From: Fonticula alba ATCC 38817
Lineage: Eukaryota; Protista; Nucleariida
Assembly: GCA_000388065.2 (NCBI GenBank)
Contig: KB932212.1
Strand: one strand, 5' to 3'
Length of the DNA stretch: 16,790 nucleotides
The notes beneath the pieces were generated by a model. It was given only the letters and a program-made list of their open reading frames with translations, was not told where the DNA came from and did not search any database. Shown here piece by piece: positions 667 to 14,292 of this stretch. A program made the translations under genes and the position numbers. Within the stretch, counting starts at the first letter, position 1. Each line of letters starts with the position of its first letter.

Positions 667-3511
667 TCACGTGGCCACCAGGCCGCCGGCACCGTCCGAA
701 TGGTACCCCGGCGGCGGGTCAGTGCGCTGCTGGAAAAGCCCTTCGCTGGCCAGGAGCCCCTCGAAGTCCTGGTGGTACGGCGGCGGGGGCGGAGCCGAGT
801 GGAAGCCCTTGCTGTGGGAGTCAGCGGCCATGGGGTCGGCCGCCCGGCCGCCACCCACACAGTACGACGAGTAGATGACCGCCTTCGGGGCGGTGCGGTC
901 GGCCGCGCCACCGCGCAGCCGACTGACCAGGTCCACGAGCAGGGCCTGAGCACGCCCGGAGGCCATCGCCGGCGGGTGGTTGTCGTCCGCGCGCGCCAGG
1001 CCGGCCGCCTGCGGCATGGTATCGACATCGCTCAGGCACATGGACGCCGCGCGCCGGGGCTCGAATTCCACCGTCTTCGGGTGGTCCCGGCCCGGGGATC
1101 GGTACAACCGACCGTCGGACTGGCTCCGGAGGGGGCCGTCGGCCCCGAGGCCCGGGGCGATGGACCCGCGGCGAATGGCCGGCGCGAACCACGACCGGCG
1201 CCGGGCGGCTTCCTGGCGCGCTTGCGCCGCGGCCGCCGCCGCCGCCTGCTCCTCCTCCTCCGCGTCCAGCCGATGGTAGTCTCCCCCGGGGGCCGTGTGG
1301 CCCTCTGCCGCGGCCGCCGCCCACTGCTGTTGCTGCTGCTGCTGCTGCTGGTCCAGGTCCATGACGCACTGGTAGCCATCCAGGCTGGGGCTGTAGACGA
1401 TCGGGTGCACCGAGAGCGAGGGGTCCGCCGAGGTGAAGAGGCCGGGTGGCATGCGCGCGGTGGCCATGCGCCGCGGCTGCCCGGTCCGGGTGCTCGGGTG
1501 GCCGGCCGAGCCGCCGGGCGCCAGGCGACGGGCCACACGCCACAGTCCCTCCGCCAGGCGGCCAGTCCACAGGGCCAGGAAGGCCGCCCGGGGAAGGGTC
1601 ACATCCGACAGCATGGGGACCAGCAGGCCCGGCAGGGCGCCGGCCATTTCCAGCGGCAGGAACTCGGCGGCCGGGTCGGGCCCGGCACCCGAGCCCCCGG
1701 CCGCCGGCAACAGCCCGGCCACCAGACGCCCGACCAGCCCGAGCCCCGGGTGCTGGGCCACCTGTGCCAGCAGCCAGATGGCCGGCCCGGCGCCCGGGGC
1801 CGACCCGGGCCCGGGCCCCTCCGGGCGCAAGCACACCAGGGCCAAGTCCAGCAGGGCCAGCAGCCCGAGCAGGGGCCCGAAGCCGGCCAGGCCGGCCCCC
1901 GGCGCGGCCGGCCCCGCCGCCCAGCCCGGCACCAGTGGCAGGAGGACCTGCTGTGCGAGGGCACCCAGCAGCTTCTCCCCCTGCCACAGGAGCACATACA
2001 CCGGGAGGATGTGGGCCACGGCCAGCAGGCGCCGGGCCGGGGCCGCGCGGCCGGCCAGCGCGCCGCGCACCTGCTGCAGCTGCTCCTGCAGCGAGGACAC
2101 GCTGTCGACCACGGCCCCGGCCGAGGTCTCGATGTCGCGAAGCCGGTTGCGCGAGCTGCTCAGCAGCCGGTCGTCTGTGCATGTGTGTGTGCGTGTGTGC
2201 ATGTGTGTGTGCGTGTGTGCATGTGTGTGCGTGTGTGCGTGTGTGCGTGTGTGCATGTGTGTGCATGTGTGTGCGTGTGTACATGTGTGCATGTGTGTGC
2301 ATGTGTGTGCATGTGTGTGCATGTGCGCATGTGTGTGCATGTGTGTGCATGTGTGTGCATGTGTGTGCATGTGTGTGCATGTGTGTGCATGTGCGTGTAG
2401 ACATGCATGAAGGGTGTCCCCGAAGGGCAGCGGCAGTTGGGCAAGTGAGGCAAGCGCAAGCAGACAGGCACCCGGCCAGGCAATTGGTCAGTGAGCATAC
2501 CCAAGGCCCGGGGCCCGGCAAACAGCAGCCCGGCCCATGGGGCCGGGGACACGCACGTGCGCTAAAAGCTTCCTCGACCAGGTCCTCACGGCGCTTGATG
2601 CGCAGAAGGATGTCCTCGGCGAAGGTGTCCATGGCGAAGAGGCCGTGGCCCAGCTGCTCCACCGCCTCGGCCAGCATGCTGGCGGCCGATGACGCGCGCA
2701 GCTGCCACGAATCGGCCTCGAGGGACTTGCACACGTCGCTCACTTGCAGCGTGTAAAGATGGTAGGCCGTGTGGTCGTGGCGGTCCTCCAGGCGCTGGAG
2801 GCACTGCTCGAGCGAGGCGTCCCGCGCCAGGGGCAGGGCCGCCGCCGGGGCGTCCTGCCCGGCGGCCCGGTCGGCGCCTGGCAGCCGGCGGGCCGGGGCC
2901 CCGGCGGCCGGGAGCTCGGCCTCAGCCTCCGCATGGTCATCGGGCCCCTGGTCCAGGGCGTCATGCAGCCCGTAGGTGCAGGCGATGGGGGCCTGGCCGA
3001 GGCGCACGCGCTGGCAGTCAAACCAGCCCAGGGCCAGGGTGCCCTGGAGGTCCGGGTCGTCGGCGATGTGCTGGCAGGTTTGCCGCAGCCGGGTGTACAC
3101 CCGCAGCAAGCACGGGTCCTGGGTCAGGCGCAGTGAGCGCAGGTGCTCCACCGCCCGGGGCGAGGGGATGTTCTTCACCACGTCCACCGGCATACGTGCG
3201 TCCAGGGGCCGGAGCCCCAGTTGCCGGTCGGCCCTGGTGCCGGGCGCCGTGGTGCTGTTGCCGCCATTGCCGGTGTGGTTGTTGTTGCTGTTGCCATGGC
3301 TGTCGGTGTGGTTGCTCGCGGTGGTGGTGGTGGTGGTGGTGCTGTTGCCCTGTGGCCGGCCGGCGGAGATGGCCGGCGAGTCGGCATCCTCGCTGTCGGT
3401 GGGGACGCCGCCGGCGAGAGCGGGCGCCAGGGCGCCATGCACTGCCAGTAGAGCCAGCAGCAAGAGCAGCAGCGCTGCGCGGCGGCTGCGGCGAAGGGCC
3501 CGACCGGACAT
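667..3511 (-). CDS. GEX1: GEX1/KAR5/Brambleberry-family nuclear envelope membrane fusion protein, 2 exons (3511-2557, 2174-667), 820 aa
   Basis: Signal peptide (MSGRALRRSRRAALLLLLLALLAVHGALAPALA). Six-Cys domain DPCLL..QTCQH..LALGWFDCQRVRLGQAPIAC..EQCLQRL..TAYHLY..DVCKSL matches the family Cys-rich domain as I recall it (Brambleberry FNCQ..NAYH..SVC). It is followed by a coiled-coil-like region, several hydrophobic segments and a low-complexity tail. The GTGCGT donor (2556) and CAG acceptor (2177-2175) are both phase 1 and join the 821..3628 and 667..2370 ORF frames; total 2463 nt = 821 codons including stop. Confidence 0.82.
2175..2556 (-). other. 382-nt spliceosomal intron of the GEX1-like gene
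   Basis: GTGCGT...CAG, phase-compatible. Contains a microsatellite. The only CTGAC is at 2491-2487. Confidence 0.85.
2177..2398. repeat. Intronic compound microsatellite (ATGTGTGTGC / GTGTGC units; CACACACATG on the transcribed strand)
   Basis: About 220 nt of alternating purine-pyrimidine sequence, abutting the 3' splice site. Confidence 0.95.
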
Positions 3512-12037: not shown

Positions 12038-14292
12038 ATGAGCGCCCTCCGTGTCCGCTTCGCACCCAGCCCGACGGGCTCCCTGCACCTGGGGGGCCTG
12101 CGCACGGCCCTATTCAACTTCCTGTCGGCGGAGAAGAGCCGCCGGGCGTCGGCCGGCTCGCCGGGCGCCGCGCTGCCGCCCTCCTTCATCCTGCGCATCG
12201 AGGACACCGACCGGACGCGCTTCGTCCCCGGGGCCGGGGAGCAGCTGGCCCGGTCGCTGTGCTGGTCGGGACTCGTGCCGACCGAGGGCCCGGGGGAGTT
12301 GCTGGTGGCGGCGCGCGAGGCCGCGCGCCAGGCGGCGTCCAGCGCACCGCTGGCGCCGGAAACAGCGGCGCCCCACTGGCCGGCCGAGCCGTGCGGCCCC
12401 TACCACCAGTCCCTGCGCACCGGGCTCTACCGGGAGCATGTGGACCGGCTGCTGGAGTCCGGCCATGCGTACCGGTGCTTCTGCACGCCGGAGCGCCTGG
12501 ACCAGATGCGCGCCTGGGCCCAGGCGGCCGCCGCCAAGCAGGGCTCCTCCCAGGCCGGGCTTTCGTACGACCGGCACTGCCTGTCCCTGTCGCCGGAGGA
12601 GTCCCGGCGTCGGGCGCAGGCCGGCGAGGCGCACACCGTGCGCCTGGCGGTGCGTGCTTTTCCTCCTCGCTCGCTGCCACCCCATTCGGACGCTTCCGCG
12701 CGCGCGCGCGCACCCGACTGACCGGGGTGTGCCCGACCGGCTATGACCCCCCGGCCCCGCTTCCCCTCCTGGCGCAGGTCCCCCCGGGTAAGACAGTCAT
12801 CAACGACCTGGTGTATGGGCGCATCGAGATCGACCATGCCCAGGTCGACGACCAGATCCTCCTGAAGAGCGACGCCTACCCCACGTATCACCTGGCCAAT
12901 GTGGTGGACGACCACCACATGGGCATCACGCATGTCCTGCGCGGCGAGGTACGGCCAGTCCCCTCGGGCCCTGCGCGGACCAGCCTCGCGGCCTGTCCAC
13001 CGGATGCTGACCGTCGGCCGCCGGGCCCGGCTCGTCTGCCGGGCCCCCGCCACACACACACACACGCACGCAGGAATGGCTCTCCTCCACGCCGAAGCAC
13101 ATCCTCCTGTACCACGCCTTCGGGTGGACCCCCCCGCGCTTCGCGCATCTCCCGCTGCTGCTGGACGAGCACCGGGCCAAGCTGTCCAAGCGCCACGCCG
13201 CTGGCAATGTGGCCGCCCTGGAGGCCAACTACCTGCCGGAGGCGGTGGTCAACTTCGTGGCCATGCTCGGCTGGACTCCCCCCCGCAGCGACGCCGACCC
13301 GGAGCAGCACACCCGGGAGGTGTTCTCCCTGGAGGAGCTGGTGCAGATCGTACGTCCAGGCCTGCCCCCATCGCGCGCCCATGCGCGCACCCTGCAGCAG
13401 CGCCTGCCTTCGGACAGGCACTGACTCCCCCCCCCCCCCCCCCGATGGGGCACCGCCATGGCACAGTTCGATGTGCGTGACATCAACCGCGGCTCGGCGG
13501 TCGTGTCGGTGGAGAAGCTCAACTGGTTCAACCGCCAGCACATCCTCCGGCTGGCGGCCACGCCGGAGGGGCTCCGGCGCCTGGCCGACATCGTGCTCGA
13601 CCATCTGGCCGGGGCGGCGCTCGATGGCCCGGCCGATGCGGCCGCCACCACCGCCGAGCACTGGACCCGCCCCATCCCCGAGGCCCCGGGGGCCGCCGTC
13701 GACCGGGAGTATGTCCTCCGCGTGGTGGCGGCCATCGTCACCGACCGCATCGCCCTCCTTGGAGATGTGTCCTCCACGTATCGGTACTTCTTCCGCGAGG
13801 CGTCGCCCGAGCAGGTGGCCGCCATCCGGGCGACCCTGGCCCCGGCCGTGGCCGGTACGTGCCCCGCTCCCCTCGGCCCTGACCTCGCTTCGCCGCCCGC
13901 CTCTTTTTTTTTTTTTGCTGTTGTTGTTGTTTGCCTGCCACACCATGCCCGGGGGCCGGCCTTTGACACCCATTCCGCTCTTTCTTCTTCTCCTTTTTGC
14001 TCCCCCGCCCCCGGCCCGGGGGGGCTGCCCAGCCACCATCCGCCACGCCGTCCTCCCGGAGCTGGCCCGGCTGCCGGACTTCGCCGACGAGAAGGCCCTG
14101 TCCGCGTGCCTGAAGGCCCGGCTGCCGGCCGACGATCCCCGGCTGCCGGCCGGCGCCGGGCCCCTCAAGCAGAAGGACCTCCTGCAGGGCCTGCGCAGCC
14201 TGCTCACCGGGTCGCCAGCCGGCGCGCCCATCGCCACGGTCATGGCCGTCCTCGGGAAGCAGGTCGCCGAGCGGCGCCTCGCCGAGTGCTAG
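12038..14292 (+). CDS. EARS2: Glutamyl-tRNA synthetase, mitochondrial/bacterial type; 5 exons (12038-12649, 12778-12948, 13074-13349, 13467-13854, 14033-14292), 568 aa
   Basis: [20 protein letters not shown] (HIGH-type motif), [65 protein letters not shown] (KMSKS-type motif), KLNWFN, and a C-terminal LRSLLTG..GAPI anticodon domain. All four introns are GT-AG and phase-compatible; total 1707 nt. Confidence 0.96.

What the first reader, a model, noticed from the sequence alone, without database searches (positions are those of the whole stretch)
667..3511. Intact GEX1/KAR5/Brambleberry nuclear-fusion gene: candidate evidence for karyogamy or cryptic sex
Seen: signal peptide, six-Cys domain with FDCQ, TAYH and DVC landmarks, coiled-coil-like region, hydrophobic segments and an intact spliced frame of 820 aa. 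Known: this family (yeast Kar5, plant/algal/Plasmodium GEX1, zebrafish Brambleberry) mediates nuclear envelope fusion, is fast-evolving and is often missed by BLAST. Inference: the organism (probably a Fonticula-like amoeba, for which I know of no described sexual cycle) retains nuclear fusion machinery, used either in cryptic sex or in nuclear/karyomere fusion during a multicellular or cyst stage.
Basis: partly seen in the sequence, partly recalled or inferred. Interest (0 to 1): 0.75.

Follow-up and report, generated by a model that had tools for sequence, protein, structure and literature searches.

The report
Fonticula KAR5/GEX1-type nuclear fusion gene
A two-exon gene of the amoeba Fonticula alba, filed in databases as a hypothetical protein, very probably encodes a diverged member of the KAR5/GEX1/Brambleberry family that fuses nuclear envelopes, which hints at, but does not show, nuclear fusion or sex in an organism with no known sexual cycle.

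Summary
On the minus strand, 3511..667, lies a two-exon gene whose product is letter for letter NCBI's Fonticula alba H696_05641, an 820-aa "hypothetical protein". It has a signal peptide, six lumenal cysteines (134-261), a long amphipathic helix, a cluster of hydrophobic helices and a long low-complexity tail.

Standard homology tools find nothing. Pfam Tht1 (PF04163) gives no hit, phmmer over 1.84 billion proteins returns only the protein itself, and the AlphaFold2 model is poor.

The family's published definition is still met:
- The cysteine spacing is 12/20/12/59/24, against 12/20/13/9/23 in land-plant GEX1 and 12/23/14/11/25 in yeast Kar5. None of 3 million random placements fits this skeleton.
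- 10 of 26 plant-conserved non-cysteine columns match (2.7 expected, P about 1e-4).
- Tht1 is the only named family among the protein's language-model neighbours.

I rate membership at about 0.85. It is a new member of a known, pan-eukaryotic family, with a 48-50-residue low-complexity insert in the C4-C5 loop.

The "cryptic sex" inference is untested. HOP2 and MND1 are present. SPO11, HAP2 and DMC1 were not detected, but the same scan also misses HORMA, so these negatives are weak. No RNA evidence could be obtained.

The parts
667..3511 (-). Whole gene, start codon to stop codon. It equals Fonticula alba H696_05641 (820 aa) and is single-copy in the genome.
   Evidence: no paralog in the genome
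2557..3511 (-). Exon 1: residues 1-318 plus the first base of codon 319.
   Evidence: GC3 0.89 in the annotated frame
2175..2556 (-). Intron, phase 1, donor GTGCGT and acceptor AG. It is mostly an imperfect CACACATG/CACACACG-type repeat.
   Evidence: the junction is confirmed by identity to P0001
667..2174 (-). Exon 2: the last two bases of codon 319, residues 320-820, and the TGA stop at 669-667.
   Evidence: GC3 0.91 in the annotated frame
3413..3511 (-). Signal peptide, residues 1-33: an Arg-rich n-region, a Leu/Ala core at 14-32, and ...ALAGG.
   Evidence: KD 2.42. No dedicated signal-peptide predictor was run.
3242..3349 (-). Thr/Asn-rich linker, residues 55-90, with four N-x-S/T sequons at 56, 67, 78 and 85. 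Likely glycosylated in the lumen.
   Evidence: weak mucin-like Pfam hit
2729..3112 (-). Cysteine-rich domain, residues 134-261, with six Cys at 134, 146, 166, 178, 237 and 261.
2804..2977 (-). Ala/Pro/Gly/Asp-rich stretch between Cys4 and Cys5, residues 179-236. It is about 48-50 residues longer than the family loop. It is coding: the stretch holds no GT dinucleotide (the first follows at the Cys237 codon), so it cannot be an intron.
2557..2695 (-). Long amphipathic, coiled-coil-like helix, first part (residues 273-318).
2053..2174 (-). Long amphipathic, coiled-coil-like helix, second part (residues 319-359).
1570..2043 (-). Membrane region, residues 363-520. Hydrophobic segments lie at 363-405, 416-434 (strongest; nt 1828-1884), 453-480 and 490-520. 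The number of true transmembrane helices is not resolved (1 strong, up to 4 weaker).
670..1509 (-). C-terminal low-complexity tail, residues 541-820, including a poly-Gln run, poly-Ala/Glu and Pro-rich PPxY-like motifs. Presumed to face the cytoplasm or nucleoplasm.
   Evidence: GC3 0.90, so it is coding

Best explanation
The gene encodes a strongly diverged, single-copy member of the KAR5/GEX1/Brambleberry nuclear-envelope fusion family.

Shown:
- A coherent two-exon coding gene.
- An N-terminal signal peptide.
- A six-cysteine domain with the family's spacing and several of its conserved residues.
- A long amphipathic helix.
- A C-terminal cluster of hydrophobic helices.

Inferred from the family's biology in yeast, plants, Chlamydomonas, Plasmodium and zebrafish:
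- The protein is inserted into the ER and nuclear envelope.
- The cysteine-rich domain and the helix sit in the perinuclear lumen, stabilised or cross-linked by disulfides.
- The membrane helices anchor it, and the long low-complexity tail faces the cytoplasm or nucleoplasm.
- It acts when two nuclear envelopes merge, coupling the outer and inner membranes and promoting inner-membrane fusion.

In Fonticula this would serve one of two purposes. One is karyogamy in a sexual cycle that has not yet been described. The other is fusion of nuclei in the bi- and tri-nucleate cells that arise from failed cytokinesis.
For: 1. Architecture. The family is defined in the literature by a signal peptide, an N-terminal CRD with six invariant cysteines, one or two coiled coils and two or three C-terminal TM helices (PMC4291462; PMC7586128). 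All four features are present.

2. Cysteine skeleton. The spacings are 12/20/12/59/24. Nine land-plant GEX1 proteins have 12/20/13/9/23 (PMC7586128 suppl. fig. 6), and yeast Kar5 C56..C141 has 12/23/14/11/25. None of 3,000,000 random placements of six Cys in the 326-aa lumenal part fits the family skeleton.

3. Conserved residues. With the alignment anchored on the cysteines, 10 of 26 non-Cys columns conserved in at least 8 of 9 plant GEX1 proteins match: Y139, L142, L159, A160, D165, G172, L241, Y250, L255 and L264. The expectation is 2.7, giving P about 9.5e-5. Sixteen shifted registers give 0-4 matches.

4. ESM Atlas features. The top hit scores 0.91 and is an unnamed eukaryotic cluster. 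The only Pfam-named family among the neighbours is PF04163 Tht1 (score 0.85, 185 shared features). The first row of the structure search is 'protein GAMETE EXPRESSED 1-like', though its TM-score is low.

5. A real coding gene. GC3 is 0.89-0.92 in the annotated frame throughout, and the gene model is identical to NCBI's.

6. Context. The meiosis-associated genes MND1 (56.6 bits) and HOP2 (42 bits) are present in the genome. Bi- and tri-nucleate F. alba cells have been reported (PMC9097593).
Against: - Pfam Tht1 (PF04163) gives no hit at E <= 10 on the exons, on sub-pieces or on the whole protein. It also finds nothing anywhere in the genome.
- phmmer of residues 105-420 against 1.84 billion representatives finds only the protein itself. 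Two word searches find only the protein itself. No metagenomic relative was found.
- No confident 3-D model could be made. The AlphaFold2 model has mean pLDDT 49, with the CRD below 50, so the fold searches are meaningless. The Atlas structural hit has a TM-score of only 0.16/0.27.
- The C4-C5 loop is about 50 residues longer than in described members.
- I picked the conserved-column set by eye from a machine-read figure, after I had seen both sequences. The P-value is therefore indicative only.
- There is no expression, localisation or ortholog-conservation evidence.
Confidence: 0.82

Rival explanations
1. It is a lineage-specific orphan ER or secretory membrane protein unrelated to KAR5/GEX1. 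The cysteine pattern and architecture resemble the family by chance or convergence.
For: No sequence-search tool links it to any other protein. Language-model hits below 0.9 are only leads, and shuffled proteins reach 0.9 in 4-10% of cases. The architecture of signal peptide, helix and TM helices is common.
Against: A chance match of the five-interval Cys skeleton has probability below 1e-6 per such domain, and the conserved columns add about 1e-4. The one named family among the Atlas neighbours is exactly the family predicted beforehand from the motifs. Even true members often fail the Pfam model: only 48% and 21% of members of the Tht1-like and GEX1-like Atlas clusters carry PF04163.
Confidence: 0.1
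2. It is a true family member but not a marker of sex. It works in vegetative or developmental nuclear-envelope events, such as fusing nuclei in multinucleate cells after failed cytokinesis or during cyst or spore formation, as Brambleberry does in karyomere fusion.
For: About 10% of F. alba divisions are non-binary, and bi- and tri-nucleate cells occur (PMC9097593). Zebrafish Brambleberry acts in karyomere fusion (PMC4291462). SPO11, DMC1 and HAP2 were not detected in the genome.
Against: In yeast, plants, Chlamydomonas and Plasmodium the family is induced specifically in the sexual phase (PMC7586128). HOP2 and MND1 are present. The negative scans are unreliable, because the same method also finds no HORMA protein and only a 26-bit Rad21 hit.
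Confidence: 0.3
3. It is a decaying relic: a family member no longer under selection or no longer expressed.
For: It is extremely diverged, has long low-complexity inserts, and no RNA evidence was found.
Against: The 820-codon frame is intact and the splice sites are canonical. Codon-position bias is strong and uniform. All six cysteines are retained.
Confidence: 0.05

Closest known systems
Land-plant GEX1 (for example Arabidopsis At5g55490)
   Same: Signal peptide, N-terminal six-Cys CRD, coiled coil, several C-terminal TM helices and a C-terminal tail. The Cys spacing is almost identical (12/20/13/-/23 in plants against 12/20/12/-/24 here). Shared residues include C-x4-Y-x2-L-x3-C, L-A six and five residues before Cys3, D before Cys3, G six residues after Cys3, L four residues after Cys5, Y eleven residues before Cys6, and C-x-x-L after Cys6.
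   Different: The C4-C5 loop is 59 residues against 9. The invariant plant W after Cys1, F after Cys3 and the LQ..FK after Cys6 are replaced. The protein is longer (820 against about 590-640 aa), with a 280-aa low-complexity tail. No sequence-search hit connects them.
S. cerevisiae Kar5 / S. pombe Tht1 (Pfam PF04163)
   Same: The same architecture and six essential lumenal cysteines, with spacing 12/23/14/11/25 (PMC4291462). Fungi are the sister lineage of nucleariids. The Tht1 cluster is the only Pfam-named neighbour by language-model features.
   Different: The Pfam Tht1 HMM does not match. Kar5 ends soon after its second TM helix, whereas Fonticula has a long tail. Kar5 has two TM helices, and the number here is unclear.
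Zebrafish Brambleberry; Chlamydomonas and Plasmodium GEX1
   Same: They belong to the same CRD family and are nuclear-envelope proteins needed for pronuclear or karyomere fusion or for zygote karyogamy (as summarised). The Atlas's best neighbours are unnamed clusters dominated by Apicomplexa and Chordata, of 588 and 504 aa. These could be such proteins, but that was not verified.
   Different: No sequences of these proteins could be fetched by reference, so no direct comparison was made.

Membership tests
KAR5/GEX1/Brambleberry family (literature definition: Ning 2013 as cited; Rogers & Rose 2014; Nishikawa 2020) | N-terminal signal peptide | tested here: met
   An Arg-rich start followed by a Leu/Ala core at residues 14-32, KD 2.42. 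No dedicated predictor was available.
KAR5/GEX1/Brambleberry family (literature definition: Ning 2013 as cited; Rogers & Rose 2014; Nishikawa 2020) | N-terminal lumenal cysteine-rich domain with six conserved cysteines at family spacing | tested here: met
   Cys 134, 146, 166, 178, 237 and 261 give spacing 12/20/12/59/24. Plants have 12/20/13/9/23 and yeast has 12/23/14/11/25. None of 3e6 random placements fits. The C4-C5 interval carries a low-complexity insert.
KAR5/GEX1/Brambleberry family (literature definition: Ning 2013 as cited; Rogers & Rose 2014; Nishikawa 2020) | Conserved non-cysteine residues of the CRD | tested here: inconclusive
   10 of 26 plant-conserved columns match (2.7 expected, P about 1e-4, shifted registers 0-4). 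However, 16 columns, including the invariant W after Cys1 and F after Cys3, do not match. The column set was read from one plant-only alignment.
KAR5/GEX1/Brambleberry family (literature definition: Ning 2013 as cited; Rogers & Rose 2014; Nishikawa 2020) | One or two coiled-coil regions after the CRD | tested here: met
   An 87-residue helix at 273-359 with pLDDT up to 91. Its 3.5-residue hydrophobic periodicity beats 98-100% of shuffles. Weak coiled-coil-type Pfam hits also occur. No dedicated coiled-coil predictor was run.
KAR5/GEX1/Brambleberry family (literature definition: Ning 2013 as cited; Rogers & Rose 2014; Nishikawa 2020) | Two or three transmembrane helices in the C-terminal part | tested here: met
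   Hydrophobic segments at 363-405, 416-434 (KD 2.16), 453-480 and 490-520. The exact number was not resolved.
KAR5/GEX1/Brambleberry family (literature definition: Ning 2013 as cited; Rogers & Rose 2014; Nishikawa 2020) | Nuclear-envelope localisation, induction in the sexual phase, and requirement for nuclear fusion | not testable with these tools
Pfam PF04163 Tht1 (HMM-defined family) | Score above the gathering threshold (21 bits) against the Tht1 HMM | tested here: not met
   No hit at E <= 10 for either exon, four sub-pieces or the whole protein, and none in the six-frame genome scan. The model is weak on distant members: only 21-48% of members of the GEX1-like and Tht1-like Atlas clusters carry it.

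The most novel reading that the evidence does not exclude
Fonticula alba, an aggregative 'slime mould' sister to fungi with no described sex, has a cryptic sexual or parasexual cycle with true karyogamy. Its toolkit would keep GEX1/KAR5, HOP2 and MND1 but lack canonical SPO11, DMC1 and HAP2. From my own memory, not checked here, this is the reduced toolkit reported for the other cellular slime moulds, the dictyostelids.
Probability: 0.25. Interest if true: 0.6.

Novelty: new member of a known kind. Interest (0 to 1): 0.4.

Why it matters
KAR5/GEX1 is one of only two conserved genes treated as specific markers of syngamy (PMC11603280).

- **Annotation gain.** It turns a "hypothetical protein" of Fonticula alba into a testable marker. 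Following its expression through feeding, collective invasion, sorocarp and spore stages would show when, if ever, nuclei fuse.
- **Method point.** Standard pipelines (Pfam, phmmer, single-sequence AlphaFold2) miss such fast-evolving members. The cysteine skeleton and a language-model search recover them.
- **Limits.** The family is already known to occur across eukaryotes, fungi included, so finding it in the fungal sister lineage is expected rather than surprising.

Tried and rejected
- **Pfam scans** of both exons, four sub-pieces and the whole protein gave no Tht1 hit. They returned only weak mucin-like and coiled-coil noise.
- **A six-frame scan** of the whole genome with PF04163 found nothing. 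The prokaryotic control genomes cannot validate that search.
- **PDB sequence search** gave nothing relevant.
- **Word searches** with exon 2 and with region 120-345 found only the protein itself.
- **Exhaustive phmmer** with residues 105-420 found only the protein itself.
- **A metagenome locus scan** found no relative.
- **ESM Atlas on residues 100-318 alone** gave only sub-noise hits (0.77, thioredoxin/QSOX-like). I rejected these as a lead.
- **Single-sequence AlphaFold2** of residues 100-560 had the CRD below pLDDT 50. The Atlas shape search with that model returned caldesmon and LRR proteins, which is meaningless.
- **An intron hidden in the C4-C5 insert** was rejected. The stretch holds no GT dinucleotide, and the CRD region that contains it keeps a GC3 of about 0.9.
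- **A second copy in the genome** was rejected.
- **Ning et al. 2013** could not be read, because it is not held.
Full report
**What is there**

The minus strand of the window carries a two-exon gene.
- The ATG is at 3511. Exon 1 runs to 2557.
- A 382-nt phase-1 intron (2556..2175) begins GTGCGT and ends AG.
- Exon 2 runs from 2174 to the TGA at 669-667.
- I searched the exons separately, by reference. The word search with exon 2 returned one database protein, P0001.
- From then on I used that database record as the full-length protein. I handed no self-joined sequence to any search tool. In one local script I concatenated the exons only to compute codon-position GC and confirm the length.
- The donor GTGCGT fits the GTRCGY consensus that another reader noted for this genome.

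An open frame is no evidence in this 68% GC DNA. The exon-1 frame stays open for 935 codons straight through the intron and the wrong frame of exon 2. The annotated frame, however, has GC3 of 0.89-0.92 and GC2 of 0.44-0.58 in both exons and in every sub-region, the low-complexity tail included. The model is a real coding gene.

**Anatomy of the protein**

| Residues | Feature | Evidence |
|---|---|---|
| 1-33 | Signal peptide, hydrophobic core 14-32 | |
| 55-90 | Thr/Asn-rich stretch with four N-glycosylation sequons | |
| 134-261 | Six cysteines (134, 146, 166, 178, 237, 261), the only ones in the 326-residue lumenal part | |
| 273-359 | One long helix, the only well-predicted part of the AlphaFold2 model (pLDDT up to 91), with a 3.5-residue hydrophobic periodicity stronger than 98-100% of shuffles | |
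| 363-520 | Hydrophobic helices, one strong (416-434) and three or four weaker | |
| 541-820 | Low-complexity tail | |

**What the standard tools say**

They say nothing.
- Pfam Tht1 (PF04163) does not match either exon, any sub-piece or the whole protein at E <= 10. It matches nothing in the six-frame genome scan either.
- phmmer of residues 105-420 against 1.84 billion representative proteins finds only the protein itself. Two word-index searches do the same. A metagenome scan found no relative.
- The single-sequence AlphaFold2 model has mean pLDDT 49, with the cysteine-rich part below 50, so its shape search is meaningless.

**Why I still think the family call is right**

1. **The definition is met.** The literature defines the family by architecture plus six invariant cysteines, not by overall similarity. 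[quoted passage not shown] Nishikawa et al. say the same for GEX1 (PMC7586128). Even Kar5 and Tht1 share only three short patches of 28-41% identity (PMC2140214).

2. **The cysteine spacing fits.** The machine-read supplement of PMC7586128 holds an alignment of nine land-plant GEX1 CRDs.

   | Protein | Cys spacing |
   |---|---|
   | Land-plant GEX1 | 12/20/13/9/23 |
   | Yeast Kar5 | 12/23/14/11/25 |
   | Fonticula | 12/20/12/59/24 |

   Four of the five intervals agree to within one residue with plants. The fifth carries an Ala/Pro/Gly/Asp-rich insert of about 50 residues. That insert holds no GT dinucleotide, so it is not an unrecognised intron. In 3 million random placements of six cysteines in the lumenal part, none fitted the family skeleton, even with the C4-C5 interval allowed to range from 9 to 71.

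3. **Conserved residues match.** Anchoring on the cysteines, I listed the 26 non-cysteine columns that are conserved in at least eight of the nine plant sequences.
   - Fonticula matches 10 of them: Y139, L142, L159, A160, D165, G172, L241, Y250, L255 and L264.
   - The expectation from composition is 2.7, giving a Poisson-binomial P of about 9.5e-5.
   - Sliding the register by 1-8 residues either way gives 0-4 matches.
   - I chose the columns by eye after seeing both sequences, so the number is indicative only.

4. **An independent method names the same family.** The ESM Atlas neighbour search on the whole protein gives a first hit of 0.91 (209 of 256 features), an unnamed eukaryotic cluster. 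The only Pfam-named family among the neighbours is PF04163 Tht1 (0.85, 185 features). The tool says 170 or more features is typical of true family hits at that score.
   - Its structure search puts "protein GAMETE EXPRESSED 1-like" first, though at TM-scores too low to count on their own.
   - The same output shows why Pfam fails. Only 48% of the Tht1-like cluster and 21% of the GEX1-like cluster carry PF04163.
   - A family named in advance from motifs, and then returned as the only named family by a different method, is unlikely to be coincidence.

I put membership at about 0.85. The gene is single-copy, and no better candidate exists in the genome.

The decisive hhalign/profile step and an MSA-based fold were therefore not run, and they are listed as next steps.

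**How it probably works (inference from the family)**

- The protein enters the ER.
- The glycosylated linker, the CRD and the long helix lie in the perinuclear lumen.
- The hydrophobic helices anchor it in the nuclear envelope, and the tail faces the cytoplasm or nucleoplasm.
- In yeast the family couples outer and inner membranes and is needed for inner-membrane fusion, with the conserved cysteines essential and possibly forming intermolecular disulfides.
- Nothing here tests this mechanism for Fonticula.

**Sex or not**

| Gene or family | Result in the six-frame genome scan |
|---|---|
| MND1 | Present, 56.6 bits |
| HOP2/TBPIP | Present, 42 bits |
| RAD51/DMC1 | One locus, scoring 366 bits with the RAD51 model and 265 with the DMC1 model; plus a distant paralog. 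No clear DMC1. |
| SPO11 (two Pfam domains) | No hit |
| HAP2 | No hit |
| HORMA | No hit, although Mad2 is expected in any eukaryote |
| Rad21/Rec8 | One hit of only 26 bits |

The last two rows show that this scan has limited sensitivity. The negatives for SPO11, HAP2 and DMC1 are therefore weak, and I do not claim absence.

- No RNA evidence was obtainable.
- Toret et al. report that about 10% of F. alba divisions are non-binary and that bi- and tri-nucleate cells occur (PMC9097593). A non-sexual use in nuclear fusion is therefore a live alternative.
- No paper in the library mentions H696_05641 or links Fonticula with KAR5 or GEX1. GEX1 and HAP2 homologs were recently used as meiosis markers in the filasterean Ministeria (PMC12132279).

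**Verdict**

- The family assignment is likely, at about 0.85, but it rests on the cysteine skeleton, anchored residues and a language-model neighbour search rather than on an HMM or a structure.
- The life-cycle inference is open.
- This is a new, unusually diverged member of a known pan-eukaryotic family. It is useful as a marker to look for karyogamy in Fonticula, and of moderate interest.

Noticed in passing
window 2206-2400 (inside the intron 2175-2556): The intron is largely an imperfect CACACATG/CACACACG-type microsatellite.
   Followed up: no
window about 500-600, just 3' of the stop codon: A tandem GGGGGAGAGGAGAG-type 14-nt purine-rich repeat (as read on the gene's own, minus, strand) lies in the 3' flank. 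It creates spurious open frames on both strands (ORFs 208-585 and 272-592).
   Followed up: no
window about 12790-12950 and 14160-14290, + strand: Fragments of a class I Glu/Gln-tRNA synthetase (PF00749 at 1.3e-16, plus an anticodon-binding domain) sit inside a long open frame. This is a multi-exon neighbouring gene. The other long ORFs of the window gave no Pfam hit.
   Followed up: partly
G000:C3:532694-532798 (L001) and G000:C4:382258-382395 (L002): MND1 (56.6 bits) and HOP2/TBPIP (42 bits) domains, both above Pfam cut-offs. This recombination pair is meiosis-associated in most eukaryotes, and it is present in Fonticula.
   Followed up: partly
G000:C4:688899-689495 (L003/L005) and G000:C31:8263-8484: Only one RAD51/DMC1-class recombinase locus was found. 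It scores higher with the RAD51 model (366 bits) than with the DMC1 model (265 bits). A distant RAD51 paralog also exists. No separate DMC1 was detected.
   Followed up: partly
whole genome G000: Six-frame Pfam scans found no SPO11 (PF04406, PF21180), no HAP2 (PF10699) and also no HORMA (PF02301). Rad21_Rec8_N gave a single 26-bit hit. Because ubiquitous families are missed too, this kind of scan under-detects in this GC-rich, intron-bearing genome, and its negatives should not be read as absences.
   Followed up: partly
window 2551-2556: The 5' splice site GTGCGT fits the GTRCGY consensus (+4C) that another first-stage note reported for this genome.
   Followed up: partly
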